From IMG/VR virus record IMGVR_UViG_3300005289_000016, positions 212,033 to 276,032 of that record: a DNA stretch of 64,000 nucleotides; one strand, given 5' to 3'. The position numbers were made by a program, and so were the translations under genes. Below are positions 26,597 through 47,163 of this stretch, piece by piece. Within the stretch, counting starts at the first letter, position 1; each line of letters opens with the position of its first letter. The notes beneath the pieces were generated by a model, which was not told the DNA's origin, made no database searches, and saw only the letters and a list, made by a program, of their open reading frames with translations.

Positions 26597-27337
26597 ATGA
26601 AACCAGAACGCTTGATCGTAGAGTGCCGAGGCAATCAAATCGGTCTCGAAGAACGCCTCCTCATGCAGCATGCTGAGGCCCACGACATCCCGGTGAAGAT
26701 CTATTACGAGAAGCACATGGCTCGTAACCAGATCCCACTGTCATCCACTGATCTGGTAGCGGGGAGTGTCCCTTTCATCAAGCATGCATTGCGTCAGTTC
26801 GGAAAGGAATTGCCTCCTGAGGATTCTTACCCTGAATGTTTGCACCATCACCTGCACCGAAAGGTTGCAAAGATGGATACGCTGCGAGATGCAAAGAACC
26901 TGATCGACGATGTCGGCTCGCACTTTGTTAAACCCGTCACCCTGAAACGTTTCACAGGCTTTGTCACCTGCGACTCCATGGACCCTCGATTCAATGGGGC
27001 GTCGGATAAAATGCCAGTGTGGGTAGGTAAGGTAGTTGAGTTCGTCAGCGAATGGCGATGCTACGTGGCTAACGGTTGCCTGCTCGATATACGTTTTGCC
27101 GATCATGGCGGGGATCGTAAGATCAAGCCTAACCGCGGCATCATCCTAGATGCTGTACGTGACCTGACAGAGTGCGCAGCGCCTGCCGGTTACGCGGTGG
27201 ACTTCGGTGTACTGTCTACTGGGCAGACTGCTCTGGTTGAACTCAACGATGGATTCTCCATCGGTGCGTACGATGGCATTGAACCTGGCATCTATTGGGA
27301 AGTCATCCAAGCCCGTTGGCAAGAGCTGATTGGCTAA
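26597..27337 (+). CDS. ATP-grasp domain protein (DUF4343 / R2K-like)
   Basis: FVKP..KRFTG, VEFVSEWRCYV, YAVDFGV and LVELNDGFSIGAY. Confidence 0.75.
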   Translation: MKPERLIVECRGNQIGLEERLLMQHAEAHDIPVKIYYEKHMARNQIPLSSTDLVAGSVPFIKHALRQFGKELPPEDSYPECLHHHLHRKVAKMDTLRDAKNLIDDVGSHFVKPVTLKRFTGFVTCDSMDPRFNGASDKMPVWVGKVVEFVSEWRCYVANGCLLDIRFADHGGDRKIKPNRGIILDAVRDLTECAAPAGYAVDFGVLSTGQTALVELNDGFSIGAYDGIEPGIYWEVIQARWQELIG

Positions 27338-27341
27338 GCGG

Positions 27342-27375
27342 CATAAGAGGGAGCCCTAGGGCTCCCTCTCACGTC
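27342..27375. terminator. Bidirectional terminator
   Basis: gagggagcc-ctag-ggctccctc between convergent genes; T-tract follows. Confidence 0.8.
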
Positions 27376-27390
27376 TTTCTTTTTTCTTTG

Positions 27391-28116
27391 TTACGCCACC
27401 CGAAGGTTGTTCGGGTGCAGGCCGTCCACGTACTTCTGAGCCACCTTGGCAGCAGCTTCAGCTTTGGTGATCAGACCATCGCGGTTGGCATCCAGGCCCT
27501 TGTTCTGAAGGTAGGCCTTGGTCTTGGTGTTCGCTTCACTGAACAGCACGTAGTCTTCAGGCTTGCCCACAGCAGTAGGTAGAAGTATCCTCATGTAGAT
27601 GTCACTGAGGGTCTTCAACTTGCCAGTGTACGGCTTGAAGAAGTTGTAGACGTAGTCGAGTTGTTGCTCGGCAGTCATCTTCAGCAACGCAGGGAGCGAG
27701 GTCTTCGAATCCTTCGCTGCCGCAGCGCCGAACTGAATCAGACCGTAGTACGGAGCACCTGCACCGTTGGCCACGGTAGGACTGAAGGTACCACCGGTCT
27801 CGAACGCCATGCAAGACATCAGCGTATCGGTACCGTCCCATGGCAAGGCCAGATCGGTAGCGATCTTGTTGGTCTTGCGCAGGAACTCATCGGAGACCTT
27901 GGCAGACCACGCAGGAGCCTTGCAGTAAGCGAACAGGGTCGCATTGATACCATCGGCAGCCGTCGATGGCTTCGACATGTTCACGGCCTTACGGCGAGCG
28001 TTCAGGAAGGCACCGTGGGATGCCCCACCCCAGATACCGTCGATGACGCCAGCGTAGAAACCCAGCGCTTTGAGGTTACGCTGAAGTTCCTTCAGTTGTT
28101 CTTTAGTTGCCGCCAT
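27391..28116 (-). CDS. Endolysin/lytic transglycosylase with N-terminal peptidoglycan-binding domain
   Basis: LQRNLKALGFYAGVIDGIWG (PG-binding motif); CMAFETG (catalytic E) and YYGLIQFG; NKGLDANRDGLIT. Confidence 0.85.
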   Translation of the reverse strand: MAATKEQLKELQRNLKALGFYAGVIDGIWGGASHGAFLNARRKAVNMSKPSTAADGINATLFAYCKAPAWSAKVSDEFLRKTNKIATDLALPWDGTDTLMSCMAFETGGTFSPTVANGAGAPYYGLIQFGAAAAKDSKTSLPALLKMTAEQQLDYVYNFFKPYTGKLKTLSDIYMRILLPTAVGKPEDYVLFSEANTKTKAYLQNKGLDANRDGLITKAEAAAKVAQKYVDGLHPNNLRVA

Positions 28117-28750
28117 TGTTGATACCCTCGAGGTAGGCTTGCATGGCCGGGTAGCAGTCCCGGAGTTTGGCGAAGGAGTAGTTGCTCATCTGCGCCTGGA
28201 TCATCTGGTCATCACGACCCGTCAGACGCCAGTCAAAGCGAAGACCTTCTTGCACCAGAGTCAGAGGGGTGTTGGCACCGGCCTCGTACTTGGTGATGTG
28301 GACCGCGTTGGCGTAATCCCACGGCGACTTCTGTAGCAGACGCCATGCCGCAGAGCTGGCCACTTGTTCCGCCGATTCCTGAGCAAAGGACAGCAGGGAC
28401 ATTGGCTCAGCCAGCACCTTGTTGTTCAGGAAGTCGTTGACGATGGCATCTTCAAGGTACAGCAGCTTAGGCGTGATGGTGCCCTTGGTGCGGAAGTACA
28501 GCTTGGTGATACCTGGACGCTGGCGAGGGATGTACGGTTGAACATCACCGCCCAGATGCGGAGCAGGTTGACCTTCTGGCCACCATTCGATGGTGTAGCC
28601 GACGATGGCGTATTGCAGATCGCTCAGGTAGTTGAAGACAGTGGCGTCTTTGATGCGGCAGTTGGCACGCAGTTGCACACCGGAGTTGTCCAGCAGGCGA
28701 ATGGTGCGGAAGTGACCGCGGTCCGGACCTGTGTAGAGTTCGTCAGCCAT
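28103..28750 (-). CDS. Hypothetical protein (last gene of the modification cluster)
   Basis: 215 aa; overlaps the lysin start by 14 nt. Confidence 0.7.
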   Translation of the reverse strand: MADELYTGPDRGHFRTIRLLDNSGVQLRANCRIKDATVFNYLSDLQYAIVGYTIEWWPEGQPAPHLGGDVQPYIPRQRPGITKLYFRTKGTITPKLLYLEDAIVNDFLNNKVLAEPMSLLSFAQESAEQVASSAAWRLLQKSPWDYANAVHITKYEAGANTPLTLVQEGLRFDWRLTGRDDQMIQAQMSNYSFAKLRDCYPAMQAYLEGINNGGN

Positions 28751-28752
28751 GG

Positions 28753-29304
28753 TTACGCCTTGAAGTGGAAGTCATTGATCAGCGACAACCGCAGTTGCGC
28801 AGGGTTAGCAGCAACGCTGTGCTGGATGTAGCTCGGCATCAGCCACAAGTCACCAGCTTTCGGCGAGATGTAGTGTTCGCCGAAGTGCGAGTCACGCACA
28901 GCACGCGGATAACCACGCGATGCATTGAAACGCGGGTCGATTAGCGACATGCCGGCTTGGGAATCTTCCGGGTAGTACACACTGGTCAGGCAGGAGTTGC
29001 CATGTAGGTGTGCACTCAGACCTTCCTGATGATCGAAGGCCTTGCCGAAGGTGTCGATCATGACTTCTTTCGGCATGACGTTGAAGATCTTCTGGATGTA
29101 GTCTTCGGCCACAGGACGCAGGATCACGTCACGGAAGTGAGTCAGGGCCGGGAACATCTCAGGGGTGATTTCCAGCGGAGTCTGCGAGTTCCGAGGGGAC
29201 ATGCAGTGCAGCTGATGGATCTCATCAATGAGGGCCGCGTTATCCACTTGGTCCAGCAGATTGACGTGACCGATCTCGATTTTCCATGGTTGGAAGAGTT
29301 TCAT
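28753..29304 (-). CDS. 2OG-Fe(II) oxygenase, HxH type (copy 3)
   Basis: AHLHGNS...SYIQHSV...RLSLIND; DPRFNASRGYP. Confidence 0.8.
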   Translation of the reverse strand: MKLFQPWKIEIGHVNLLDQVDNAALIDEIHQLHCMSPRNSQTPLEITPEMFPALTHFRDVILRPVAEDYIQKIFNVMPKEVMIDTFGKAFDHQEGLSAHLHGNSCLTSVYYPEDSQAGMSLIDPRFNASRGYPRAVRDSHFGEHYISPKAGDLWLMPSYIQHSVAANPAQLRLSLINDFHFKA

Positions 29305-29318
29305 TGAACGTCCCTATG

Positions 29319-29876
29319 TCAGTTGGGGTCGAGGAAGTAATCGTTGACGAAGGAGAGGCGTAGCTCATCCCGAACGGGGTTAACCGAATGCAGGATGTAA
29401 CTTGGGATGATGTACACATCCCCAGCCTTAGGCTCGATCCGGTAGTTACCGAAGTGTCCACGACTGATGTGGCTTGGATAACCACGAGCAGCATTGCCCC
29501 GCGGGTCAACCAAGACCAGACGTGACGCAGCATCAACCGGATACATCACCACAGTCAGACTCGACATAGCGTGGATGTGATGTTCGAGGTCTGCTCCGTC
29601 CTGGATACATACACATTGCGACAAAATGTCGACATCCGCAGCTTCAAGGCTCAGGTCGAACTCAGTGCGAATGTACTCAAGGACTTTCGGAGTGATGCAG
29701 CGATCACGCAGGTCCACCAGATCCGCTACCTCAGGAGCGTTGGGATCAACGGATACGAAGCTGCCGTTGACTTGCATGCTGTTGGCCAAGATAGCACCAA
29801 CGATGAGATCAAGGTCCACCTGATCAGCAATGTTGAACTTACCGATGGTGGTGGTCCAAGGTTGGATACGTTCCAT
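29319..29876 (-). CDS. 2OG-Fe(II) oxygenase, HxH type (copy 2)
   Basis: HHIHAMS...SYILHSV...RLSFVND; DPRGNAARGYP. Confidence 0.8.
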   Translation of the reverse strand: MERIQPWTTTIGKFNIADQVDLDLIVGAILANSMQVNGSFVSVDPNAPEVADLVDLRDRCITPKVLEYIRTEFDLSLEAADVDILSQCVCIQDGADLEHHIHAMSSLTVVMYPVDAASRLVLVDPRGNAARGYPSHISRGHFGNYRIEPKAGDVYIIPSYILHSVNPVRDELRLSFVNDYFLDPN

Positions 29877-29878
29877 GG

Positions 29879-30442
29879 TCAGAGATCCGTGATGACGTAG
29901 TATTCGTGCAGCAATGAGAGACGGGTAGCCTCGTCGACATTGGGCACACTGTGTTGGACATAGCTCGGGAAGATCAGCACATCGCCCGCTTTCGGACTGA
30001 CTTTGAAGTTGGCAAAGTGCGGGCTATTGCGCATGCGCTTGGGATAGCCACGACAAGCATTGCCTTTCGGGTCGAACATGACCAACGAATTGGTCGAGTC
30101 GCTTGGGTAGCAGATGGCAGAGATCACAGAGCCAGGATGGTAGTGCGGAAACAGACCTTGCCCTTCAGGAATCCACTTGCCGTTGGTGTCGACGTGGAAT
30201 TCATTGATGTTGAACGCAAAGTGTTCCTTGGCGTACTCCATCACCTTGGGTGTAATGATCCGGTCCCGCATCTCGAGGATGATCGGGAAGAGTTCCCTGT
30301 TCTTGATGACCAGTTGACGATCGTCTTCTCCGTCAGTCATTGCAAACAACGACAGGACTTCATCAGCATACGCTGCCATGTCGAACTGATCGGCTACGTT
30401 GAACCGCACCAATGGAACAGACCACAGGTTGAGTGTTTCCAT
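29879..30442 (-). CDS. 2OG-Fe(II) oxygenase, HxH type (copy 1)
   Basis: PHYHPGS...SYVQHSV...RLSLLHE; DPKGNACRGYP. Confidence 0.8.
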   Translation of the reverse strand: METLNLWSVPLVRFNVADQFDMAAYADEVLSLFAMTDGEDDRQLVIKNRELFPIILEMRDRIITPKVMEYAKEHFAFNINEFHVDTNGKWIPEGQGLFPHYHPGSVISAICYPSDSTNSLVMFDPKGNACRGYPKRMRNSPHFANFKVSPKAGDVLIFPSYVQHSVPNVDEATRLSLLHEYYVITDL

Positions 30443-30444
30443 GG

Positions 30445-30876
30445 TTACTCCGTGAGGGATGCGATCCCTTCCTCAGTGCACTCGAGCAGACAGTACTTGA
30501 CCGACTTGGGAGCCCAGCCGCCTTTGATCCAGTCCGGCATGTCTTTCAACCGTTTTAAGATCGCTTCGTACGTTTCTGGATCGCAACTGTACGGGACGAA
30601 GTACGGGTCCTGATTAAGGAACAGGTCCTTGTCGTCGAGGATGGTCCGAACAGGCAGGTTGTAGAGATCACACAGCGTGAAGGCGTAGATGATGGCCACG
30701 GCGTAACTCTTAGCCGGGTACACCAACGGGAATTCAGCCTTCTGGAAGTACGCCAAGGCGTTCTCTACTAGCTCACCACTTTCGACGAACTCCATCAGGG
30801 AGAAATCGTCAGTGTGCTCGGTGACCAGCAGATTATAGAGCTGCTGGTATTCTTTATAAGGGAGAGTGTGCATCAT
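30445..30876 (-). CDS. Hypothetical protein in radical SAM cluster
   Basis: 143 aa; coupled to flanking genes; LVYPAKSYAVAIIYA. Confidence 0.7.
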   Translation of the reverse strand: MMHTLPYKEYQQLYNLLVTEHTDDFSLMEFVESGELVENALAYFQKAEFPLVYPAKSYAVAIIYAFTLCDLYNLPVRTILDDKDLFLNQDPYFVPYSCDPETYEAILKRLKDMPDWIKGGWAPKSVKYCLLECTEEGIASLTE

Positions 30877-31918
30877 GTTCCTCTTTGGTCATCAGATCCC
30901 AGCGGTTCTTCATGTCGATGAGGCATTTTTCAGAACCCGTTTCTTCCATCAGGCGCTGAACGTCACACCGTGAACAACTATCGAGGAAACAGCAGTCGCC
31001 ACACTCAGGATGTGCACTGTATTTCTCAAGGTTACGGTAGTACGCTTCTTGCCGGTCTGCGATCACAGCTTCGGCAGTCCACGGCTTTGCCAGCTTGAAG
31101 TTGTCTTTGTAGATGGTGAGGTTCTCTACCAACACAATGGTCGAATAGAGGGAGCCGCCACGGTAGGTGAATTCATACCCTTCCTTGTTGCCTGGAATCA
31201 ATGGTACAAATTCAACGGTATTCACACGCTCTTTTGCAAAGTCAGCGAATACCTTCAGATCTCGCTTGAACCGCTCGGCATTCATGATGTTGTCGAAGCC
31301 TTGGCGGGCTGCCACAAAGGGGAACTCAATCACCTTGTGGATACCTTCGCCGAAGTCCATGTAGCGGATCTTCTTGAACGCCTCGTCGCTGAAGTGAGCA
31401 AGGTTACCTTCCTCGACGTTGATGGTGGCATACAGGCGACTGAACTCTGCTTTCTTCATCATGCCTTTGAATCGCGCAAGGCGATCCTTGAGGATGGCGA
31501 CGTATTTGTCGTTGCAGATATTCTTCAAGGTGATGGGTGTGCCAACGTTGACATACTTGCCGGGCATCAACTCATCCATCAACTCAGCGACTTCTTCCAG
31601 ATGGCGATCATGGAGCATCGCCATGTTGATCGTCAGCACTTTAAAGTGAGCAGCGATCTTGCGAAACGATGGGTGGCGCAATACCTGAAACCCGTTGTCC
31701 GCACTGGTAATGTCGGTCGGCCCTAACTTGAGTTCCAGCAGACGGAAGTCGTGGGCTTTCAAGTCTTCGAGCAACGCTTCCAAATCAGCCGTGTCTTCAT
31801 CAGACATGTCGAAGGGAGCGAAGTTCTTCTCGACAGTACAGCCGGGGCAGCTATAGCCACACCCCTTGAGGACTTCCAGACCCAAGTTAAAGGTCTGGGA
31901 TACACGTTCACTGAACAT
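30854..31918 (-). CDS. Divergent radical SAM-like protein with Cys-rich C-terminus
   Basis: CGYSCPGC (CxxxCxxC); GPTD in place of GGEP; C-terminal CGDCCFLDSCSRC...C. Confidence 0.75.
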   Translation of the reverse strand: MFSERVSQTFNLGLEVLKGCGYSCPGCTVEKNFAPFDMSDEDTADLEALLEDLKAHDFRLLELKLGPTDITSADNGFQVLRHPSFRKIAAHFKVLTINMAMLHDRHLEEVAELMDELMPGKYVNVGTPITLKNICNDKYVAILKDRLARFKGMMKKAEFSRLYATINVEEGNLAHFSDEAFKKIRYMDFGEGIHKVIEFPFVAARQGFDNIMNAERFKRDLKVFADFAKERVNTVEFVPLIPGNKEGYEFTYRGGSLYSTIVLVENLTIYKDNFKLAKPWTAEAVIADRQEAYYRNLEKYSAHPECGDCCFLDSCSRCDVQRLMEETGSEKCLIDMKNRWDLMTKEEHDAHSPL

Positions 31919-32936
31919 ACTGCAACCCCACTAGGCAGTCTTTGATTGACATGTGTTGCATGATCGCGCTGATGCCCTTCTCAGAGCAGCTACTGATGTA
32001 GGGGCACGTCATACAGGGCGTGTCCTTCAAGTACTCCAGAGACGCATCCAGAGCCTTCTGACGCACTGTCAAGAGGTTCTCCATGGTCCATGGCTTAGGG
32101 ATGGTGAACTCGTCGTCTAGGAACGGGCAATCATCCTTCAAGAAAGGCACCCAGTACAGCTTACCGTCGGTGTACAGCAAGTTGCACATGGTCCCAGTGT
32201 CATAATGCAGGTCTGGGTTACGTCGACGTTCATCCTGACCTTCAAGCTCAGAGTAGTACTGCGTGATGCGGTAACTCATGCGCTTGATCTGCTCACTCAC
32301 CATCAGGGTCTTTTGTTTAACCCGACCGTAAGGGATGTTCAGGATGTCATCTTTGTCCACAGGGAACTCAACGTCAAACCCAGCCCGCATGAACTCCTCG
32401 AACTTGTCGTCCACGGTGTCCTGCGTGCAACTGATAACAAAGCCAGCCTCATTCAAGTACGCCGATTGCATGGTGTTCTTGATGTGGGAAAGCTTCTTAC
32501 CCACCATGTTGCCGAACTTCTCATTGCGGAAGAAGTACGGCGCAGCAGGGATCAGGAAGCGGATAGGCTTACCTGGCACTGATTGATCGATCTCAGCACA
32601 CATACTCGTGTACTTGTCCATGTTCGTCTCAAGGAACGCTGCGTTGAACGTCACCTGATGGAACATCTGAGCCATCTCTTGGAACTCAGGATGGGCCATG
32701 ACCTCATCTTTGTTGCTGGCAGTCATGTAGTCGGTAGGGCCGACACCCAGATCGAACGCCACGTAACCTGCTGTGGTCATTTCCGTCAGCAGGTCCTTCA
32801 GGGCAGCGAGGTCATTGACATCACCGCCCATGGCCTTGTCGATCATGCATCCGGGACAGACGTGTCCGCACCCTCGGAATAGATCAAGCGTGATTTCCAG
32901 CCGCTGTCTGTGCTGGACGAAGTGTGGAGATTCCAT
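31908..32936 (-). CDS. Divergent radical SAM-like protein with Cys-rich C-terminus
   Basis: CGHVCPGC; GPTD; C-terminal CMTCPYISSC...C; paralog of 30854-31918. Confidence 0.75.
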   Translation of the reverse strand: MESPHFVQHRQRLEITLDLFRGCGHVCPGCMIDKAMGGDVNDLAALKDLLTEMTTAGYVAFDLGVGPTDYMTASNKDEVMAHPEFQEMAQMFHQVTFNAAFLETNMDKYTSMCAEIDQSVPGKPIRFLIPAAPYFFRNEKFGNMVGKKLSHIKNTMQSAYLNEAGFVISCTQDTVDDKFEEFMRAGFDVEFPVDKDDILNIPYGRVKQKTLMVSEQIKRMSYRITQYYSELEGQDERRRNPDLHYDTGTMCNLLYTDGKLYWVPFLKDDCPFLDDEFTIPKPWTMENLLTVRQKALDASLEYLKDTPCMTCPYISSCSEKGISAIMQHMSIKDCLVGLQYVQ

Positions 32937-33847
32937 TGGTCAAGTAACCCCTTGAAGCCGTTACAGGAGTGAGTCAGATCTTTCACCTCCCGAAGATGCT
33001 CAGAGAGGCAGTGACCCATGTAGTTACAGGAAGAGCAGTGACCATTGGTCGTGACTGCTTCTTTTTCTTTGGCACACCACGCAAGGTAACCAGCAACGCC
33101 ATCCACATCGAGGAAGAACTCGTTGTCATTGGCATCGAACTCAAGCACAGCCAGAGAGCCCGTCGGTGTGATGTAGAGGTGATCGTCACTGAAGGCATTA
33201 CGCGTACCTTCAGCCGCCTCTTTCACTTGCCGCTCATTCTCAAAGTAGAACTCTCGCTCAGGGTGTTCAATGACAGCCCAGACGAAACGCTCAAACTCAT
33301 CAAACGGCACGTTCTGGGCATTGGCCTGGTTCGTGCTGTAGGGTTTGATCTCGACGTCCTTTGCATTGGCCAGCATGTTCATGGTCTGCACGAACGTATC
33401 GACGCTCACGGTGTCCAGGAACTTGCGAGAGGCCAACGTCAGGATGGTGAAGGGACGCGTCAGCATGAAAAGGTTGTTCAACACCCGGTCATGCATCTCC
33501 CGTGCTTCAAAGTCATACGACACGCTGAGGTCGAAGTCCAAGTCCTCGGTGATCTCGTTGAGCAACGTGAGGTTCGAGACCAACACGATATCATCCAGAC
33601 CGTACCGGTGCAGGATCTCTTTCATCTCCAGCAGGTACTCGGGAGGCAACAGCAGGACTTCCCCACCGTAGATGTCGATGTGCCCAACGTCATAGTGCTC
33701 AAGGATCTCCAGCAGCCTTTCTTCAAAGACGCCCAAGTCCATGCGTGTCCGATCACCCAACTGCTCTGGTGTGAGATAACAGAACTCACAGCGCAGGTTA
33801 CAGTAGTAAGACGGGTTTACGCTGAGGTTGATTTTTGGCTTAGGCAT
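32843..33847 (-). CDS. Radical SAM/SPASM-domain protein
   Basis: CNLRCEFC, YGGEVL and C-terminal CSSCNYMGHC...C; overlaps the next gene by 94 nt. Confidence 0.85.
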   Translation of the reverse strand: MPKPKINLSVNPSYYCNLRCEFCYLTPEQLGDRTRMDLGVFEERLLEILEHYDVGHIDIYGGEVLLLPPEYLLEMKEILHRYGLDDIVLVSNLTLLNEITEDLDFDLSVSYDFEAREMHDRVLNNLFMLTRPFTILTLASRKFLDTVSVDTFVQTMNMLANAKDVEIKPYSTNQANAQNVPFDEFERFVWAVIEHPEREFYFENERQVKEAAEGTRNAFSDDHLYITPTGSLAVLEFDANDNEFFLDVDGVAGYLAWCAKEKEAVTTNGHCSSCNYMGHCLSEHLREVKDLTHSCNGFKGLLDQWNLHTSSSTDSGWKSRLIYSEGADTSVPDA

Positions 33848-34023
33848 TTGATAAGTTCTCGCTGGTAGGGATTCAATGGAACTCCCATGGAATCCTTCAT
33901 TACATCGAGGAAGTCATCCACGTTCTCGGTGCACCGTTTGATGACGACCTTCTTCAAGACCTCAGGGATCTGAAGCTTGAGTTCGTAGCCCGGTGGGAAG
34001 AAAGCCATTTGATCGACGATCAT
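33817..34023 (-). CDS. Small hypothetical protein
   Basis: 68 aa from ATG 34023 after GAGGA. Confidence 0.5.
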   Translation of the reverse strand: MIVDQMAFFPPGYELKLQIPEVLKKVVIKRCTENVDDFLDVMKDSMGVPLNPYQRELIKCLSQKSTSA

Positions 34024-34033
34024 GGTCAAGTCC

Positions 34034-34240
34034 TCAGAGAATCGTGGAACCACTTTCAACTGACTTGGAATGTTTCATAGCCAGTTCATGGATGCTCTTG
34101 CGCAGGTCAACTTCGAAGTCGGCAAAGCCCACCGACGTCATGGTCAGTCCACGAGCCACCAGCTGACGTATGATCGCTTCGCCTTCCCGCTCGAGGGTGG
34201 TGGTAAGTTCTTTCTTCAGTTGTTCATGACCGTATTTCAT
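34034..34240 (-). CDS. Small hypothetical protein
   Basis: 68 aa; starts 2 nt after the stop of the upstream rSAM gene. Confidence 0.6.
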   Translation of the reverse strand: MKYGHEQLKKELTTTLEREGEAIIRQLVARGLTMTSVGFADFEVDLRKSIHELAMKHSKSVESGSTIL

Positions 34241-34242
34241 GG

Positions 34243-35331
34243 TTAGCCTTTCGCGATGAGTTGGACAGATTCGTCCACGTAAGGTGTTGGGATCAGGTAT
34301 TCAGTCTGACCGTTCAATTCAATGATGCGAGGAGCCAGCGTCTTCATCTTCTTGCAATGATGTTCAGCCAGACCCAGTCGTTTAGTGTCAGCCACCGTCT
34401 TACGGCAACCGTTGCACACAGGGAACATCGGACACTCGTTACAGGCGTCCTTCATCGACCACAGTTCTTCCTGATTGCGCAGTGGAGTGAAGAACTCACC
34501 CGCCATCTCTTTCTCGAAGTCGATGGGGTACTTGAGGTCGTCACCAAAGGCTCCACAGGAGAAATACTGGTTGCCCGGTTGCAGACTGCGGATACCGCCA
34601 TCGCAATCACGGGACAGAGGGCAGATGGTGTTCTGCGTCGACAGGCGCTTGACCAATTGCTTGGTGTTGAACTCCCACTGCATGAGACCAGCGTCGTAGA
34701 TTTCAAGGTACTTCTCGTACATGTCAGCCTGAGTGTACATGGTCTCAGCGTTGCCCATGGAGACGCCCTTGTTGAGCACCACAGGACCAGAAGCTACCGC
34801 GTAGTTAACCTTGGCCTCTACGCCCATCCGCTGAGCCAGACGCACCGTGTCAAGGACCGTGTGCTCATTGCTCTTATCGACGACTGCAATGAAGTCAGGA
34901 CGATAGCCAATGCGCTCAAGGAACAGATCACTGACTGCCCAGAACTCTTCTTCAGTGAACGGCGTCTTATCGCCCTTGAGGCGTGCATCGCCGTACTGGA
35001 ACGAGGTCGTCACACCCAGACGTGGATGACGGAACAACTCTTCCCACATCTCAGGCTTCTTGTAGAAAGGCCAGAGGTTGCTGGTGAAGGAGATCGACGC
35101 ATCGGACTCCAGACGGTCTAGGATCGCGATCAGGTCCCAGTAATACTGCACAGGCATCATGAGAGGGTCACCGCCGTTAACGATGATGGTGCGCGTCTCA
35201 GGGTACCGTACGATGAACCGTTCCACATCCTCCAGACTCACGACCTCATTGGCGTCATCGGTCAGGTAGGTGCTGGAGCAAAAGGTGCACTTGAAGTTAC
35301 ACCGCTGCGTCGGCTTTAGGATCAGGTCCAT
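34243..35331 (-). CDS. Radical SAM/SPASM-domain protein
   Basis: LKPTQRCNFKCTFC, NGGDPLM; SPASM-like CPLSRDC...SCG...CNECPMFPVCNGC...C. Confidence 0.9.
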   Translation of the reverse strand: MDLILKPTQRCNFKCTFCSSTYLTDDANEVVSLEDVERFIVRYPETRTIIVNGGDPLMMPVQYYWDLIAILDRLESDASISFTSNLWPFYKKPEMWEELFRHPRLGVTTSFQYGDARLKGDKTPFTEEEFWAVSDLFLERIGYRPDFIAVVDKSNEHTVLDTVRLAQRMGVEAKVNYAVASGPVVLNKGVSMGNAETMYTQADMYEKYLEIYDAGLMQWEFNTKQLVKRLSTQNTICPLSRDCDGGIRSLQPGNQYFSCGAFGDDLKYPIDFEKEMAGEFFTPLRNQEELWSMKDACNECPMFPVCNGCRKTVADTKRLGLAEHHCKKMKTLAPRIIELNGQTEYLIPTPYVDESVQLIAKG

Positions 35332-35512
35332 CGGTGTTCCCCTTGTTCTCGTATTTGCCCGTCCAGACACCAAGGTAATCTCGACGGAATTGTTCGTGCT
35401 CTGGACTACGCGCTTCCTCTAACTTCTTACGAAGCCAGGTATCGTCACCCAGCTTACGAGGGAACCGAGGTACACGTGGTAGGCGACGCATTGGTAGGAT
35501 GGGGTCGGTCAT
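35297..35512 (-). CDS. Small basic hypothetical protein
   Basis: 71 aa MTDPILPMRR; SD GGAG; TATGAA 20 nt upstream. Confidence 0.5.
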   Translation of the reverse strand: MTDPILPMRRLPRVPRFPRKLGDDTWLRKKLEEARSPEHEQFRRDYLGVWTGKYENKGNTDGPDPKADAAV

Positions 35513-35531
35513 GGATAACACTCCAGATATA

Positions 35532-35537
35532 TTCATA
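35532..35537 (-). promoter_or_regulatory. Candidate late promoter core inside the rSAM cluster
   Basis: TATGAA in AT-rich context, just downstream (minus sense) of a hairpin. Confidence 0.45.
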
Positions 35538-35568
35538 GGAATGTTTGAGTGAAGTTTTAAATAGCGGA

Positions 35569-35593
35569 CATAGGGGAGGGACGAGCCCTCCCC
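35569..35593 (-). terminator. Hairpin/terminator inside the rSAM cluster
   Basis: ggggaggg-acgag-ccctcccc immediately after the stop of 35598-36596. Confidence 0.6.
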
Positions 35594-35597
35594 GAGT

Positions 35598-36596
35598 CTA
35601 CAAGACGACTTTGAACATCTCTCGGATAGAGCAGACCTTGGACTTGCTGTCCAAGACCTTGTCGTGCAGGAAACAACGCAGCCCACACCGGGAGTAGTAC
35701 TCGCACTCAAAGCAACCGTAATGTTCCACGAATGCAACCTCAGCAGCGTCCTTGGCAATCAAGCCTTCAGTCTCGTCTAAGATCGCATCCTTACCTGCTT
35801 CAGACCAACAGGTACTGATCACGCCATCCTTGTTGATGATCTTGGTGGAGCGACACGTGGTCTCATTGATCACGTTGTTCTTCCAGTCCTTGATCGGATA
35901 CGAGTTCGGGTACTTGTTGTTCAGCGCAATGTACATCGTGCTGATCAGGTCTTCGTCAGGTTGGTGATGCAGGTACATCTGACTGGGGATGTAATGATCG
36001 AAGTACACATCGTACCGTTCACACATCTCAGCAAACTCCTCGCCTTCTTTACCGTCAAGGAATGTCTGGATGTTCTGTTTGGTGATCACCACGTTGACCG
36101 TCTGGACCAGATCACCCAGCGTCTCGAGGTTCTTGAAGAACAAGGCTCGTTGAGCAGGATTGAATCGACCAGCGGGGTCATAAGACGTGGCCAGCCAGAC
36201 ACGCTCATCAATCACCCGAAGGCGTTCGATAAGGTGCCTGACTCGGTCAGTGTTGTGATAAACGAGGTTCGTGCCAAAGACCAGTTTGATGTGCTTGAAG
36301 TGACTCAAGGCCATCTTGCCGGCTTGGTAGTAAGCTTCGAAGAGTTCGTCGCTCACCTCGTTCATGAACAGTTCACCGCCTGTGAAGTTAACCACCATGG
36401 CTGTGTCTGGATGTGTAGTCGCCAACAACTTAGCAACCTTGTCGATCACTAGATCCCCGTCGAGACCCACTTTGGAATCGTGGTCCTGGTGGCAGAATGA
36501 GCAGCGCATGTTGCACAGCTCGAACAGAATCAGGTGAGCTTCTTTCCACTTACCTTTCTTCTCACGCAGGATGTCTACAACAGGGATCAGGTTCAT
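35598..36596 (-). CDS. Radical SAM/SPASM-domain protein
   Basis: CNMRCSFC, TGGELF; C-terminal CRS...TC...CFECEYYSRCGLRC...C. Confidence 0.85.
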   Translation of the reverse strand: MNLIPVVDILREKKGKWKEAHLILFELCNMRCSFCHQDHDSKVGLDGDLVIDKVAKLLATTHPDTAMVVNFTGGELFMNEVSDELFEAYYQAGKMALSHFKHIKLVFGTNLVYHNTDRVRHLIERLRVIDERVWLATSYDPAGRFNPAQRALFFKNLETLGDLVQTVNVVITKQNIQTFLDGKEGEEFAEMCERYDVYFDHYIPSQMYLHHQPDEDLISTMYIALNNKYPNSYPIKDWKNNVINETTCRSTKIINKDGVISTCWSEAGKDAILDETEGLIAKDAAEVAFVEHYGCFECEYYSRCGLRCFLHDKVLDSKSKVCSIREMFKVVL

Positions 36597-37654
36597 TACC
36601 AGTTCGCTCCCTTGACGCAGTCCTTCAGGACGTCGACTTGTTCCGACAGGATGTACCGCACGAGGTTCTCGTCGTACTTGCCGGAGTCAGCGTTAGGCAG
36701 AGCCAGACGCTTGGCACCTTTGAACATGGTCAGCACCCGCTGCTTCAACACCTCAGGATCAAGGAGGTCTTCATCGGACGTGAGCAACTGATAGACCAGT
36801 CGAGTACGGCCCGCAGTCGGACCCTCGTCGCAATGATCCAACACGGTGATCAGTTCCAGAAGCAGGCCCTTGATCCACACGTCCGTTGGCTTGTTGTCGA
36901 ACAAGTTCGGCTGGAGGAACATGGTGCTGTTCAGGTAGTGGAAGTTCAACGTACCTTCGAACACGCTCTGCCCATTGAGCAGGGTGTTCATGTCAGCACC
37001 GGCGAAGTCCCAGGCTTCCGGGTTGGCGATCTGACGACCCCATACGTCGAGAGCATCGTAGCCGTTGGCCAGCGCGATGCGACGCAGGATGTTCTTCAGA
37101 GTCTTTGGCAGCTTGCCCACACGGTTGTCGGTGAACAGACGCATGATGCGCCATTCCAGCGACAGCGAGTCTGGGTTTTCAGTAACCAGCTCACCGAACA
37201 CTTCCTGATGAGGATCTTCGAACGCGAACAGTTCTTGAACGACCTGCTCGTTGATGGTCACTTCGTTCAGGATGTTGGTGGTCGGCTTGTGCATGTTCAG
37301 CAGCGACACCTGGAAGGTAGCCTTCTTGCAGAGCATGATCCAGCGGAACACGTCGATCGTGACGTTAGGCATTACTGCCTTGACCAACATGGTGTACAGG
37401 CGCAGGTAGGTCTGACCGTCGACGTAGACGAACACCTTGTCGTCTTGGCTGAAGATCTTGTCGAACAGGTCCTTGAACACATCGCCTTCAAGCGCGTCCA
37501 GAGACACCGCATAGCCAAGTTGCTCAGAACTCTCCTCGTACTCCGCCGGGTGATACTCAAAGCCCACACGTGGACTGATGGTGGCGTACGGAATACGCTT
37601 ACGTGAGATACGGGATTCGATCTCGACGTAGATTCGGTCACGCAGATGGTACAT
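36596..37654 (-). CDS. Hypothetical protein in radical SAM cluster
   Basis: 352 aa; SD AAGGAG before ATG 37654; strong codon bias. Confidence 0.75.
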   Translation of the reverse strand: MYHLRDRIYVEIESRISRKRIPYATISPRVGFEYHPAEYEESSEQLGYAVSLDALEGDVFKDLFDKIFSQDDKVFVYVDGQTYLRLYTMLVKAVMPNVTIDVFRWIMLCKKATFQVSLLNMHKPTTNILNEVTINEQVVQELFAFEDPHQEVFGELVTENPDSLSLEWRIMRLFTDNRVGKLPKTLKNILRRIALANGYDALDVWGRQIANPEAWDFAGADMNTLLNGQSVFEGTLNFHYLNSTMFLQPNLFDNKPTDVWIKGLLLELITVLDHCDEGPTAGRTRLVYQLLTSDEDLLDPEVLKQRVLTMFKGAKRLALPNADSGKYDENLVRYILSEQVDVLKDCVKGANW

Positions 37655-38480
37655 GTTCAATCTCCTTGACCGTCTTGTTCATCTGCTCAACAAGAGCATT
37701 GAACTGTTCAGGGACTTCCTGACCGATCAAGGCCATGAAGAAAGGGTTGTTCTGGTGAGCGAAGAACGCAAACAGGTTGGCCCCAGCGAAGCAGTATTCG
37801 TTGAAGAACAACTTGTTCCAGTTCCAATCGCTCTCTTCGATGCCCATGCAGACCAACGGGAAGTTGTCATGAGCAATCAACTTGACGAAGTTCAGACCTA
37901 CGAGGCCTTCTTCTTCATCTTGCGGGTAGTTCAGGACTTCTGACTTGAGGTCTTCTTTGCACTGGAAGGCATAAAGCGGCAACGAGTCCAGACGCCGGAG
38001 CCACAGGTCGACGAGGTCGTAGTTGGCTTCGATGAATGGCACTGGATCGAATGGCAGACTGAACGGTTTCCCGGTAGCCGCCAAGATCACGTTGATGGCC
38101 AACTCTTCCAGATCGCTGATGCTCACCAGTACAGTGGACTTGAGATAAGCCACCAGCAGGTTCTGCATGATCGTCTGGTCACCGAACTTCAACCGTACGG
38201 CGATGTTCAGGTTGGACAGGTACGTGATGAGCGCAGCGTCCTTCAGCCGACTGTTGTCAAGGCTGATGTGGAACTCTACGTTCTCGGTGAATTTGCGTTT
38301 TAAGTCGATGACCGGAATCGGTGCAATGGTCTGGATGACCACCAACCCATCGGGCTGTACGACTACTGTTGATGGCTCTTTGGGCAAGTCGTCAACAGAT
38401 GGTTCTTTGGACATGCGAGATCCTCCCCACATTGGGTTACTACGGCCGGCATTAGCGTGACAGTTAGAATGGCATGACAT
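37638..38480 (-). CDS. Hypothetical protein with two in-frame starts (38480 and 38414); long form begins MSCHSNCH
   Basis: AGGAG 6 nt before ATG 38480 and GGAGGA 6 nt before ATG 38414; same frame, no stop between. Confidence 0.75.
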   Translation of the reverse strand: MSCHSNCHANAGRSNPMWGGSRMSKEPSVDDLPKEPSTVVVQPDGLVVIQTIAPIPVIDLKRKFTENVEFHISLDNSRLKDAALITYLSNLNIAVRLKFGDQTIMQNLLVAYLKSTVLVSISDLEELAINVILAATGKPFSLPFDPVPFIEANYDLVDLWLRRLDSLPLYAFQCKEDLKSEVLNYPQDEEEGLVGLNFVKLIAHDNFPLVCMGIEESDWNWNKLFFNEYCFAGANLFAFFAHQNNPFFMALIGQEVPEQFNALVEQMNKTVKEIEHVPSA

Positions 38481-38570
38481 GACGAACTCCTAATGAACAT
38501 CAATACATACCAAACTAACTAGCAGTGTCTTTTAACGACGACCACGTGCGCAGTGACAGTTAGAATGGCA
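38457..38570. repeat. 18-bp exact direct repeat encoding CHSNCH
   Basis: gtgacagttagaatggca at 38457-38474 and 38553-38570. Confidence 0.95.
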
Positions 38571-39071
38571 ACTGGTGTGGCAGATGACGTTCGATACTGC
38601 CAACGGGCTGGCACGGCAGTAGGCGTTGTAGTAGTTCCACAACTCATCGCAGCTTGACTGGAAGTTACTCAAGTCCAGGATAGCGCCCTTATAAAGGGTC
38701 GACAGCGGCGCCGCCGAAGCAAAGTCACCAACACCGTACGCCGAGTTAGCCACCGCAGTACCGTCGTAGATCAGTTGGTTACCGAGCTGATAGTGCGACC
38801 GGTAGATCAGGATACGCATCAGACGGATGTTACCGAAGACGTTTGCGAAGTTACGCAACACAGCCTTGGCCTGCGCAGCGGCAGGAGCACCCGCTTGGAA
38901 GTTACCAGCCCCTACTGTTTCAGCACGGCCGTTGGTATCGCCGTAGAACCAGCCTGGAATAGATCCGGCTGGGTAGCTGTTGGTACCCCACGAGATACCA
39001 GAATTGCATCGAGCCCGGATACGCGCCATGGCTTCAACGCCCATGCGGTTCCGTGTAAGTACTTCGGCCAT
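38532..39071 (-). CDS. Putative virion/tail protein with C-terminal Cys/His repeat (candidate modification substrate)
   Basis: 179 aa rich in G/A/N/Y; ends ICHTSCHSNCHCARGRR. Confidence 0.7.
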   Translation of the reverse strand: MAEVLTRNRMGVEAMARIRARCNSGISWGTNSYPAGSIPGWFYGDTNGRAETVGAGNFQAGAPAAAQAKAVLRNFANVFGNIRLMRILIYRSHYQLGNQLIYDGTAVANSAYGVGDFASAAPLSTLYKGAILDLSNFQSSCDELWNYYNAYCRASPLAVSNVICHTSCHSNCHCARGRR

Positions 39072-39072
39072 A

Positions 39073-40107
39073 TCACACCTTTAGAATCAGGTTGGATTGT
39101 TGATTGCGACCCGAGAGGTAACGCAAGGTGTTCTTCAGTCCACCGCACCGCCCACTCTGCCATGGCAGACGGTGGCAGTCACCGCCGCACAGGTCAGACA
39201 CGTCGCACGCAAGGCATTCATCTGCCCAAGTCAACTCCTTGGCGATTTGCTCCACACGACCATCGGACTTGAGGAAGACTTCTACCCCCTCATCCATTTT
39301 GGCATGATGCAGTCGAGCAGCCGAATTCGGGCAGCCAGACAAAGAGCCGTCGGAGTTGATGGTCACCAGATTCTGCTCACAGTTGCGGCAGTTGGTGTCC
39401 ACCTTGACTACGTTGTTCTTCAGCTTCTCCTCGATGATGTCGAGGGTCTTGATCTTGTACGTTGGGTTGCGGGCCTTATACCGGTGGTACAGTGCGAGGT
39501 ACCAGTTGTCTTGCTCTTCGTTGTCCGGGAAGATCGACATGTTGACTTCAGCGTTACCGTCAACTGTCAGGCGCTCCAGAGACACGTCATCCACCGCGAA
39601 GCTGTCCAACTGGTCGAGCAGCCAGTCAGGGGTGGACTTGATCAACTCACGGCTCACAGAGACCTTCAGGGCAATGTGCACGCCATGACTGCGGAGCAAC
39701 TCAAGGTTGTTCTTCCACAGGTTGAATTGTTTCTCGTTACTCCATCGAATCCAGTGATCCCAGCTGGTGCCAATAACGCTACCGAAGTAGTCCTTGATGA
39801 AGTCGAGGTGAGCATCCGTGATCTTGAAAGTCAGGTTGCTGTTCGCACACATCGAGACATGCGGGTTGTCGAAGAAGTTATCGGCGTACCGCTTCAGCTT
39901 TTCCAGAGGTACGAGGAACGGCTCACCGCCATGGAACTCCATGTGGTAATGCGTACCCTCAGGGTACTTGGACATGAACTCTTTCACCCAGCCCGCAGTT
40001 GCATCGGGATCGAACTGGGTCTTGTCACCGTTCTTGCCATTGGTAAAGCAATGCTTGCAGTCCAGATTGCAGGAACCAGTGGTTTTGACATAAATGGTTT
40101 TGTTCAT
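39073..40107 (-). CDS. Radical SAM/SPASM-domain protein
   Basis: VKTTGSCNLDCKHC, FHGGEPF; SPASM-like CRNC...GCPN...CLACDVSDLCGGDC...C. Confidence 0.9.
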   Translation of the reverse strand: MNKTIYVKTTGSCNLDCKHCFTNGKNGDKTQFDPDATAGWVKEFMSKYPEGTHYHMEFHGGEPFLVPLEKLKRYADNFFDNPHVSMCANSNLTFKITDAHLDFIKDYFGSVIGTSWDHWIRWSNEKQFNLWKNNLELLRSHGVHIALKVSVSRELIKSTPDWLLDQLDSFAVDDVSLERLTVDGNAEVNMSIFPDNEEQDNWYLALYHRYKARNPTYKIKTLDIIEEKLKNNVVKVDTNCRNCEQNLVTINSDGSLSGCPNSAARLHHAKMDEGVEVFLKSDGRVEQIAKELTWADECLACDVSDLCGGDCHRLPWQSGRCGGLKNTLRYLSGRNQQSNLILKV

Positions 40108-40108
40108 G

Positions 40109-40621
40109 TTAAAGCTTCTTCTCTAGGAACTGCTCCAAGCCAAAACTCAGCATGATGGAGCTGTCAACGTTGATGGCCCGATGGTAGGTACCGCGAGGGA
40201 TGAATAGCGAATCCCCAGCCGACAGTTCTACCTGCCCATCTGGAGACTCAAAGACTTTGCGACCCTGGACCATGTAAATGATCACATCGTCGGGGTCGGT
40301 ATGCATGGTGAAGCTCTTCGAATCCTTGGGGGACAAGAAGAGATGACAGGACACAGGACCGTTGTGGTTAAAATGTCTGCCCAGTCGACGACATTCCTCG
40401 AACATGATGAAGTTCAACCGCTCAAAGCCTTCGACCTTGATGGGTTTGGTTTCACCATGCTCGAGGTAGTCGAGAGGACTCAAGGCCCCGTACGACTTGT
40501 CGTTCTCGATGTACTTGACCAACTGCTGCTCGTACGGATGAGGACTGTCGAAGAAACGGTCGAGTCCCAAGGATGCCTCGGTGATGCCGATAAACTCGTG
40601 ATCGTCCAATCTCTTCAACAT
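40109..40621 (-). CDS. JmjC/cupin_4-type 2OG-Fe(II) oxygenase
   Basis: FTMHTDPDDV (HxD), MVQGRKVF and LSAGDSLFIPRGTYH (distal H). Confidence 0.8.
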   Translation of the reverse strand: MLKRLDDHEFIGITEASLGLDRFFDSPHPYEQQLVKYIENDKSYGALSPLDYLEHGETKPIKVEGFERLNFIMFEECRRLGRHFNHNGPVSCHLFLSPKDSKSFTMHTDPDDVIIYMVQGRKVFESPDGQVELSAGDSLFIPRGTYHRAINVDSSIMLSFGLEQFLEKKL

Positions 40622-40645
40622 GTGAACCTCATCGGTATAAGTCAG

Positions 40646-42091: not shown

Positions 42092-42115
42092 GGAGGAACT
42101 CCATCATCCGAAAAG

Positions 42116-42121
42116 TTCATA
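42116..42121 (-). promoter_or_regulatory. Candidate late promoter core
   Basis: TATGAA 25 nt upstream of the tail-fibre start 42091, just after the hairpin 42125-42155. Confidence 0.45.
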
Positions 42122-42124
42122 AAC

Positions 42125-42155
42125 GACACACCACGTGGGTTAGACGTGGTGTGTC
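42125..42155 (-). terminator. Hairpin/terminator between tail-fibre genes
   Basis: gacacaccacgt-gggttag-acgtggtgtgtc. Confidence 0.65.
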
Positions 42156-42161
42156 TCAGGA

Positions 42162-44552: not shown

Positions 44553-44696
44553 TTATGCTCTCCGTGGGATCTCCATCGGTTCAGGTGCCGCTTGGAAAAG
44601 GGACCGTGAATTCTTTGAGTCATTACTTAAAAACAAAGCTTGTCTTATATTGAATATCAGACAACTGGCATACCATTATCGTGGGAGACTCGATAA

Positions 44697-45992: not shown

Positions 45993-45995
45993 CAA

Positions 45996-46029
45996 CATAG
46001 AGGAGGAGGGATGCCCTCCTCCTCTTATG
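45996..46029. terminator. Bidirectional terminator
   Basis: catagaggaggaggg-atg-ccctcctcctcttatg. Confidence 0.8.
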
Positions 46030-46034
46030 CCGGA

Positions 46035-47098: not shown

Positions 47099-47163
47099 AG
47101 ACACCTCTTGTTAAAATGAAACACTGCGACCTATCCTACAGAATTAGGGGAAGGACCTAGCTA

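What the first reader, a model, noticed from the sequence alone, without database searches (positions are those of the whole stretch)
28753..30442. Three tandem paralogous HxH-type 2OG-Fe(II) oxygenases with a shared DPxxNAxRGYP...HF insert
Seen: three ORFs of about 185 aa with H-x-H...H triads and terminal R-x-S. All share DP(R/K)(G/F)NA(A/C/S)RGYP and PKAGD. Known: this fold uses 2-oxoglutarate, and HxH replacing HxD marks a distinct, poorly characterised subfamily. Inference: triplication with divergence suggests site-specific sequential oxidations (e.g. of different His/Asn residues) or a hetero-oligomer.
Basis: partly seen in the sequence, partly recalled or inferred. Interest (0 to 1): 0.6.

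Follow-up and report, generated by a model that had tools for sequence, protein, structure and literature searches.

The report
Three phage iron oxygenase paralogues
Three neighbouring, intact copies of a little-studied iron oxygenase sit at the end of a conserved jumbo-phage gene cassette of radical SAM enzymes, and most likely add hydroxyl groups to a protein with an invariant Cys-His-rich tail encoded in that cassette.

Summary
Three minus-strand genes (A 28753-29304, B 29319-29876, C 29879-30442) are about 36% identical paralogues. All score above the Pfam PF13759 cut-off, and all keep HxH...H plus RxS.

- **HxH is the family norm.** Both solved PF13759 structures have it.
- **The DPxxNAxRGYP stretch is not an insert.** The loop is about as long in 2rg4. 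Its sequence marks a subfamily tied to this cassette.
- **The triplication is old.** Each copy has orthologues in other phages, and the number of oxygenase-like genes per locus runs from 1 to 4.

All three copies are under strong purifying selection (dN/dS 0.03-0.10). The model of C is closest to 2rg4, then to protein prolyl hydroxylases.

Among 55 loci of at least 12 kb found by oxygenase similarity alone:
- 53 carry at least two radical SAM genes of the cassette.
- 44 carry a protein ending in (CHxx)3-RGRR.

Best reading: these are accessory tailoring hydroxylases of an undescribed protein-maturation cassette. The substrate is inferred, not shown. I found no paper on the cassette.

The parts
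29879..30442 (-). Oxygenase C (187 aa). It belongs to the most widely distributed clade. Motifs: H100-x-H102, H164, R174-x-S176, loop DPKGNACRGYP at residues 124-134.
   Evidence: PF13759 49.5 bits. AF2 pLDDT 93. Z 18.2 to 2rg4. C clade of 67 of 101 rows. dN/dS 0.038.
29319..29876 (-). Oxygenase B (185 aa), from the rarest clade. Motifs: H100-x-H102, H163, R173-x-S175.
   Evidence: PF13759 34.6 bits. B clade of 11 rows. Orthologue in L010 at 63% identity. In L089 a B-clade gene takes the slot after p143. dN/dS 0.103.
28753..29304 (-). Oxygenase A (183 aa). Motifs: H99-x-H101, H162, R172-x-S174.
   Evidence: PF13759 41 bits. A clade of 22 rows. Orthologues at 73-76% identity in L019, L022 and L040. 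dN/dS 0.030.
30445..30876 (-). p143, a 143-aa acidic protein of unknown function (phrog_20737). It is a core cassette member, usually placed just before the first full-length oxygenase.
   Evidence: Present in 53 of 55 loci and in the Bdellovibrionota cassettes.
30854..33847 (-). Radical SAM paralogues rSAM6 (30854-31918), rSAM5 (31908-32936) and rSAM4 (32843-33847). Each has CX3CX2C and a C-terminal CxxCx5C motif.
34243..36596 (-). Radical SAM paralogues rSAM3 (34243-35373) and rSAM2 (35598-36596).
36596..38480 (-). u354 (36596-37660) and u280 (37638-38480; the real start is probably the ATG at 38414). Both are conserved cassette proteins of unknown function.
38532..39071 (-). u179, the candidate substrate. 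It is a basic 179-aa protein: a folded domain of unknown fold followed by an invariant tail of three CHxx units and RGRR.
   Evidence: Alignment A3 has invariant C164, H165, C168, H169, C172, R176, R178 and R179. AF2 pLDDT 90, with the tail at 53-72. Best PDB Z is 4.0.
39073..40107 (-). rSAM1, a radical SAM/SPASM maturase. Its weak best hits, all far below the curated cut-offs, are to the anaerobic sulfatase maturase, YhhB, AmcB and PapB models.
   Evidence: phrog_1802 at 1.2e-51.
40109..40621 (-). Cupin/JmjC-like protein with HxD...H. It is a fourth predicted iron oxygenase of the cassette.
   Evidence: Cupin_2 38.3 bits and JmjC_2 37.9 bits. Sequence.
27391..28750 (-). [quoted passage not shown] These close the gene row.

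Best explanation
A, B and C are three functional, anciently diverged paralogues of one subfamily of PF13759. This subfamily has the double-stranded beta-helix fold, an all-histidine iron site (HxH...H) and the usual Arg-x-Ser that holds 2-oxoglutarate.

They are accessory tailoring enzymes of a conserved late-gene cassette. Its core is four radical SAM/SPASM maturases, the proteins u280 and p143, and u179. u179 is a folded protein whose flexible C-terminal tail is invariant: three CHxx units followed by RGRR.

The most likely mechanism is that each oxygenase uses Fe(II), O2 and 2-oxoglutarate to hydroxylate a side chain of a protein substrate. The most probable substrate is the u179 tail, before or after the radical SAM steps. 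The three paralogues would differ in site or in the state of the substrate they accept.

- **Shown:** paralogy, intact catalytic motifs, fold, purifying selection, and tight, deep gene linkage to the cassette.
- **Inferred:** 2OG dependence, hydroxylation chemistry, the identity of the substrate, and the division of labour among the three.
For: **Family and fold**
- PF13759 above cut-off for all three.
- The model of C has pLDDT 93. Its nearest structures are 2rg4 (Z 18.2, rmsd 2.5, 177 aligned), then protein prolyl hydroxylases: PHD2 at 15.3, Trichoplax PHD at 15.2, the P. putida EF-Tu hydroxylase at 14.2 and the PBCV-1 collagen P4H at 14.0. AlkB and TET-type enzymes score about 11.

**Catalytic residues**
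- H, H, H and R are invariant, and S nearly so, in 101 homologues.
- They are also kept in all full-length copies across 32 loci.

**Selection**
- dN/dS is 0.03-0.10.

**Linkage**
- Loci were fetched by oxygenase similarity alone. Of the 55 that are at least 12 kb long, 53 hold two or more cassette radical SAM genes, 53 hold p143 and 44 hold the CH-tail protein.
- The linkage persists at 24-33% oxygenase identity. In those loci the oxygenase often lies between rSAM3 and rSAM4.
- It also holds in the isolates Ralstonia phage RSF1 and Pseudomonas phage pPa_SNUABM_DT01.

**Divergence between paralogues**
- Clade-specific residues lie directly after HxH (positions 103-104) and after RxS (177-181), next to the active site.

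**Candidate substrate**
- u179 is the only basic protein of the cassette (pI 9.2), while the enzymes are acidic.
Against: - No direct evidence exists for any substrate.
- Oxygenase copy number (1-4) does not follow the number of CHxx units or the variable tail residues.
- The cassette core occurs in Bdellovibrionota genomes with the same tail but with no oxygenase of this family, or only a very divergent one. The oxygenases are therefore dispensable for the core chemistry.
- An all-His iron site has no characterised 2OG-dependent precedent that I know of, so 2OG use itself is unproven.
- Oxygen-dependent enzymes working beside oxygen-sensitive radical SAM enzymes need temporal or substrate ordering that is unknown here.
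Confidence: 0.5

Rival explanations
1. The oxygenases hydroxylate other proteins: the tail fibres encoded just upstream, other virion proteins, or a host protein as the Pseudomonas prolyl hydroxylase does with EF-Tu. On this view the linkage to the radical SAM cassette reflects shared late expression, not a shared substrate.
For: - The fold is closest to protein prolyl hydroxylases, including the EF-Tu hydroxylase.
- The cassette lies between tail-fibre-like genes (phrog_2163) and the lysin.
- Copy number is uncoupled from tail composition.
- The u179 tail has no proline.
Against: - The linkage survives rearrangement. In the reduced cassettes the oxygenase sits between rSAM3 and rSAM4.
- It holds across very distant phages.
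- I did not check whether tail-fibre genes accompany those reduced cassettes.
Confidence: 0.2
2. A, B and C form an obligate hetero-oligomer. This could be one catalytic subunit plus scaffolds, or three active sites in a single complex.
For: - The genes are tightly packed and so probably co-translated.
- A heterodimeric 2OG oxygenase (TlxIJ, 7vbq) is among the structural matches.
Against: - All three keep every catalytic residue.
- Many cassettes carry only one full-length oxygenase (L005, L014, L020, DT01). Others carry C+A, C+B or B+A.
- Each paralogue is conserved on its own.
Confidence: 0.1
3. The all-histidine iron site works without 2-oxoglutarate, as in the thiol dioxygenases (cysteine dioxygenase, ADO, plant cysteine oxidases). 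It would oxidise the invariant cysteines of the tail.
For: - The 3-His triad is the hallmark of thiol dioxygenases (my own knowledge, not tested here).
- The candidate substrate has three invariant cysteines.
Against: - RxS is conserved ten residues after the distal His, the usual 2OG-binding position.
- No thiol dioxygenase appears among the top 50 structural matches, whereas 2OG oxygenases fill the list.
Confidence: 0.08
4. They act on nucleic acid (phage DNA base modification or repair) or on a free metabolite, as is often assumed for phage '2OG-Fe(II) oxygenase' auxiliary genes.
For: - The phrog_81 label is 'auxiliary metabolic gene'.
- AlkB and TET-like enzymes and small-molecule oxygenases match at Z 10-13.
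- The PF13759 gene of cyanophage S-CAM1 sits among metabolic genes, not in a cassette.
Against: - This subfamily is almost always inside the radical SAM/SPASM cassette, and the best hits of those enzymes are peptide and protein maturases.
- Structural similarity is clearly higher to protein hydroxylases.
Confidence: 0.1

Closest known systems
PF13759 (2OG-FeII_Oxy_5), with the solved but uncharacterised members 2rg4 and 3bvc
   Same: - HMM match above cut-off.
- Same fold (Z 18.2).
- Same HxH...H, DPR, PxxGD and RxS motifs.
- Same loop length.
   Different: - About 24% identity.
- The NAxRGYP signature is specific to this subfamily.
- These proteins fall below the TIGR02466 cut-off.
- This subfamily is tied to a radical SAM cassette, unlike the PF13759 gene of cyanophage S-CAM1.
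Protein prolyl 4-hydroxylases (PHD2, the Pseudomonas EF-Tu hydroxylase PPHD, the PBCV-1 collagen P4H)
   Same: - Double-stranded beta-helix core with Z 14-15.
- Distal His followed by a basic residue that holds 2OG.
- Protein or peptide substrates.
   Different: - HxH instead of HxD.
- 10-18% identity.
- The candidate substrate tail has no proline.
Tailoring Fe(II)/2OG hydroxylases of modified-peptide pathways that also use radical SAM enzymes (PoyI of the polytheonamides; the thioamitide His hydroxylase ThoJ, PDB 6zyk)
   Same: - An accessory oxygenase encoded beside radical SAM maturases and a precursor with a long N-terminal part.
- ThoJ appears among the structural matches.

The role of PoyI is from my own knowledge.
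   Different: - No sequence kinship beyond the superfamily.
- The 'precursor' here is a folded 160-aa domain with a 16-residue tail.
- The host is a phage.
- There are up to four oxygenase paralogues.
The bacterial HXS anti-phage system, in which HxsA with His-x-Ser repeats is matured by the radical SAM enzymes HxsB and HxsC (PMC13128918)
   Same: - A protein with His-x-Ser-type repeats is matured by paired radical SAM enzymes.
- rSAM1-3 hit the HxsB and HxsC models weakly.
   Different: - Scores are far below cut-off (18-27 bits against 268-370).
- The repeats here are CHxx with invariant Cys.
- u179 has no peptidoglycan-binding domain.
- HXS has no oxygenase.
- This cassette is carried by phages and by Bdellovibrionota genomes.

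Membership tests
PF13759 (2OG-FeII_Oxy_5) | Whole-protein score above Pfam's gathering cut-off of 27 bits | tested here: met
   A 41, B 34.6 and C 49.5 bits. Three matches over the cut-off in the phage genome and none elsewhere in it.
PF13759 (2OG-FeII_Oxy_5) | Double-stranded beta-helix fold like the solved members 2rg4 and 3bvc | tested here: met
   Model of C: Z 18.2, rmsd 2.5 and 177 of 187 residues aligned to 2rg4. Foldseek E 2e-11 to 3bvc. A and B were not modelled.
PF13759 (2OG-FeII_Oxy_5) | HxH...H metal motif with RxS after the distal His | tested here: met
   Present in A, B and C, in 2rg4 and 3bvc, and invariant in 101 homologues.
TIGR02466 (NCBIfam subfamily) | Score above the curated cut-off of 62.5 bits | tested here: not met
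   26.2, 17.3 and 35.9 bits. These are related to the subfamily but are not members.
Fe(II)/2-oxoglutarate-dependent oxygenases (functional class) | Fe(II) binding and 2OG decarboxylation coupled to substrate oxidation | not testable with these tools
   Only the motifs and the fold are seen. The acidic ligand of the usual HxD/E triad is replaced by His.
Prolyl 4-hydroxylases | HxD...H triad and a proline-containing substrate | tested here: not met
   HxH in all copies. The conserved tail of the candidate substrate has no proline. These proteins may work like a P4H but are not members.
HXS system (HxsA-D) | [quoted passage not shown] | tested here: not met
   HxsB and HxsC hits of 18-27 bits against cut-offs of 268-370. 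u179 has no family hit at all.

The most novel reading that the evidence does not exclude
The three genes are all-histidine Fe(II)/2OG hydroxylases. They decorate His, Arg, Ser or Asn residues of a radical-SAM-crosslinked (CHxx)3-RGRR tail on a protein of unknown fold. They belong to an undescribed protein-maturation system shared by jumbo and other phages and by predatory Bdellovibrionota. If so, they would give PF13759 its first substrate and would be the first 2OG oxygenase with a 3-His triad to be characterised.
Probability: 0.3. Interest if true: 0.8.

Novelty: new variant of a known kind. Interest (0 to 1): 0.6.

Why it matters
PF13759 oxygenases are common in phages, including cyanophages, and in some bacteria, yet no member has a known substrate. 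This subfamily now has a concrete, testable candidate: the invariant tail of u179, encoded a few genes away.

The surrounding cassette has four to six radical SAM/SPASM enzymes, a JmjC-like cupin and one to four oxygenases. It is conserved from Pseudomonas-type and Ralstonia/Burkholderia jumbo phages to many uncultured phages and to Bdellovibrionota. It does not appear in the literature I could search.

It may be a new kind of protein maturation, used by two kinds of predators of Gram-negative cells. An all-His 2OG oxygenase would also interest enzymologists.

Tried and rejected
- **Co-fold of oxygenase C, Fe and u179 residues 135-179.** Score 0.25, below the mark of 0.34, so no verdict. This is not evidence either way.
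- **ESM Atlas look-ups for p143 and u179.** No usable hit.
- **Fold search of the u179 model.** No solved relative (best Z 4.0), and only uncharacterised phage proteins in BFVD.
- **PADLOC scan of ten cassette proteins.** Only weak generic 2OG and viperin-type hits.
- **Literature searches.** The terms covered PF13759 and TIGR02466, radical SAM in jumbo phages, and phage-encoded modified peptides. I found genome-annotation mentions only.
- **Virion proteomics tables of the Ralstonia phages RP12 and RP31.** Those phages carry a different radical SAM cluster, so the tables do not help.
- **Correlation of oxygenase copy number with the number or make-up of CHxx units.** None seen.
- **Idea that the result explains cyanophage PF13759 genes.** Rejected, because the S-CAM1 copy is not in such a cassette.
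- **Order of the duplications.** The midpoint-rooted tree pairs A with B, while outgroup-rooted trees pair A with C. I treat the order as only moderately supported.
- **Not used.** The large representative-protein search was not needed. No reads tools were used. No alternative genetic code was used. No contig looked human.

Full report
**Where the window lies**

The window is the last 64 kb of a 276,032-bp virus record rated complete. The nearest isolate is Pseudomonas jumbo phage pPa_SNUABM_DT01 (76% DNA identity over part of the region). Its oxygenase is 61% identical to C.

**Observation**

Three adjacent minus-strand ORFs lie exactly at the reported coordinates: A 28753-29304, B 29319-29876 and C 29879-30442.

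- They are about 36% identical to each other, with E about 1e-40.
- Each passes the PF13759 cut-off.
- Each has HxH, a distal His, RxS ten residues later, the DP(R/K)xNAxRGYP loop and PKAGD.
- The phage genome has only these three PF13759 genes.
- A close relative (L088) has the same C-B-A order. Against it, dN/dS is 0.038, 0.103 and 0.030, like the neighbouring radical SAM genes.

All three are therefore maintained genes.

**What is special and what is not**

- **HxH is the family norm.** Both solved PF13759 proteins (2rg4, 3bvc; deposited as 'uncharacterized') show HxH, DPR, PxxGD and RxS.
- **The loop is not an insertion.** It spans 26 residues here and 28 in 2rg4.
- **Its NAxRGYP sequence is a subfamily signature.** It is nearly invariant in 101 homologues. 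It is absent from 2rg4 and 3bvc. The loop is deleted in a fourth, short clade of oxygenase-like paralogues (144-184 aa), which still keep HxH...H...RxS. Many related phages have this short clade; the window does not.
- **The proteins miss the TIGR02466 cut-off**.

**Fold**

The AlphaFold2 model of C (pLDDT 93) is a double-stranded beta-helix.

| Match | Z |
|---|---|
| 2rg4 | 18.2 |
| PHD2 | 15.3 |
| Trichoplax PHD | 15.2 |
| Dictyostelium PHD | 14.8 |
| P. putida EF-Tu hydroxylase | 14.2 |
| PBCV-1 collagen P4H | 14.0 |
| AlkB and TET-type enzymes, most small-molecule oxygenases | 10-13 |

The fold points to a protein or peptide substrate but does not prove one.

**History of the paralogues**

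A tree of 101 homologues resolves three clades: C with 67 rows, A with 22 and B with 11. Adding the oxygenases of the reduced cassettes as outgroup puts all three inside the jumbo-phage lineage. B branches first and A and C are sisters, with SH-aLRT 88-93. The midpoint-rooted tree instead pairs A with B, so the order is only moderately supported.

The arrangements seen after the p143 gene are:

- C alone
- short copy + C
- C + B
- C + A
- short copy + C + A
- C + B + A (the window, L088, L026)
- B + A
- one locus with four copies

The window therefore shows one state of a variable oxygenase set, not a fresh triplication. Residues that are conserved within each clade but differ between clades lie directly after HxH (positions 103-104: PG, AM or GN) and after RxS (177-181). 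This fits a difference in specificity.

**Context**

On the minus strand the genes run in this order:

1. a baseplate gene
2. tail-fibre-like genes
3. a JmjC-like cupin with HxD...H
4. rSAM1
5. u179, u280, u354
6. rSAM2, rSAM3
7. two small ORFs
8. rSAM4, rSAM5, rSAM6
9. p143
10. oxygenases C, B, A
11. u215

All six radical SAM proteins have CX3CX2C and a C-terminal Cys motif of the SPASM/twitch kind. The best NCBIfam hits of rSAM1 are peptide and protein maturases.

u179 is the striking member.

- It ends in three CHxx units followed by RGRR.
- In 41 orthologues averaging 33% identity, the residues C164, H165, C168, H169, C172, R176, R178 and R179 are invariant.
- Some orthologues carry eight or more CHxx units.
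- Its body is a confidently modelled domain (pLDDT 90) with no solved relative (best Z 4.0).
- The tail is flexible.

This looks more like a protein with a matured tail than a classical leader and core peptide.

**Linkage**

I fetched viral loci by oxygenase similarity only. Among the 55 loci of at least 12 kb:

| Feature | Loci |
|---|---|
| two or more cassette radical SAM genes | 53 |
| p143 | 53 |
| the CH-tail protein | 44 |
| the cupin | 40 |

The number of oxygenase-like genes per locus is 1 in 24 loci, 2 in 18, 3 in 12 and 4 in one.

- The linkage persists at 24-33% oxygenase identity. These loci carry a reduced cassette with four radical SAM genes, and the oxygenase often lies between rSAM3 and rSAM4.
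- It holds in Ralstonia phage RSF1, whose ORF071 ends in the same tail.
- The same annotations (cupin, radical SAM, two oxygenases) are listed for Burkholderia phage S13.
- The core (rSAM1-4, u179, u280, p143) also occurs in Bdellovibrionota genomes, including Mb-sized contigs. There it comes with no PF13759 gene or only a very divergent one.

The oxygenases are thus accessory to a core radical SAM pathway. By contrast, the PF13759 gene of cyanophage S-CAM1 is not in such a cassette. The inference applies to this subfamily, not to the whole family.

**Mechanism proposed**

Fe(II) would be bound by H100, H102 and H164 (numbering of C). 2-Oxoglutarate would be held by R174 and S176. Oxidative decarboxylation would give a ferryl species that hydroxylates a side chain of a protein substrate.

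The best candidate substrate is the u179 tail, whose invariant residues are Cys, His and Arg. The three paralogues would take different sites or different intermediate states.

- **Shown:** motifs, fold, selection and linkage.
- **Inferred:** cofactor use, chemistry, substrate and division of labour.

Points against are that copy number does not follow tail composition, that the core works without oxygenases in Bdellovibrionota, and that I know of no characterised all-His 2OG oxygenase.

The rivals are set out in their own section:

- other protein substrates
- an obligate hetero-oligomer
- 2OG-independent thiol oxidation
- nucleic acid or metabolite substrates

**Comparison with known systems**

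These proteins are members of PF13759. They work most like protein hydroxylases of the P4H type but are not members of that family (HxH, and no proline in the candidate substrate).

The cassette resembles modified-peptide pathways that combine radical SAM enzymes with a tailoring 2OG hydroxylase. It also resembles the bacterial HXS defence system, in which radical SAM enzymes mature a protein with His-x-Ser repeats. It fails the membership tests for HXS.

I found no paper on the cassette. Phage genome papers only list the annotations.

**Verdict**

The genes themselves are a new variant of a known, uncharacterised family. Their value lies in the context, which gives a concrete and testable substrate hypothesis.

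Noticed in passing
window 38532-39071 (-): u179 is a basic 179-aa protein. It has a confidently folded domain of unknown fold and an invariant C-terminal tail of three CHxx units plus RGRR. Orthologues occur in dozens of phages and in Bdellovibrionota. It deserves a finding of its own.
   Followed up: yes
window about 38459-38476 (-), in the spacer between u179 and u280: An exact 18-nt copy of the tail-coding DNA (it reads CHSNCH) lies after the u179 stop codon, behind a second stop. It makes ORF listing start u280 too early, at 38480. The likely start is the ATG at 38414, behind GGAGGA. It may be a relic of a tail-repeat expansion.
   Followed up: partly
L008, L009, L027, L030, L090 (u179 orthologues): Some orthologues have eight or more CHxx units, separated by short NV(P)V linkers, instead of three. 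This shows no matching rise in oxygenase number.
   Followed up: partly
window 40109-40621 (-): A cupin with HxD...H matches JmjC_2 (PF08007) and Cupin_2. It is a fourth likely iron oxygenase of the cassette. To my knowledge PF08007 includes ribosomal His and Arg hydroxylases, and His and Arg are the invariant tail residues.
   Followed up: partly
window 30854-40107 (-): Six radical SAM paralogues each carry CX3CX2C and a C-terminal SPASM/twitch-like Cys motif. rSAM5 and rSAM6 get no Pfam hit but carry the motifs.
   Followed up: partly
L091, L092, L095, L096, L100, L101 (Bdellovibrionota genome contigs): The core cassette (rSAM1-4, u179 with the same tail, u280, p143) occurs in genomes of predatory bacteria, two of them on contigs over 2.4 Mb. 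So it is shared by phages and by cellular predators of Gram-negative bacteria.
   Followed up: partly
L013:9153, L016:9154, L019:9138, L089:6980 and others; absent from the window: A fourth clade of short oxygenase-like proteins (144-184 aa) keeps HxH...H...RxS but lacks the DPR...RGYP loop. It usually lies just before p143.
   Followed up: partly
window 26597-27337 (+): An ATP-grasp protein of the R2K clade (PF18299, 100.6 bits) converges on the lysin gene. It is conserved at the same place in pPa_SNUABM_DT01.
   Followed up: no
window 44676-45998 (-) and 44697-45992 (+): Two full-length overlapping ORFs lie on opposite strands, and neither has a family hit. The minus-strand product has an odd composition, so the plus-strand ORF may be the real gene.
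   Followed up: no
window 27300-47200: Sigma-70-like promoter sites are depleted: 2 found against 10.9 expected from shuffles. This fits transcription by a phage-encoded polymerase, as in phiKZ-like phages.
   Followed up: no
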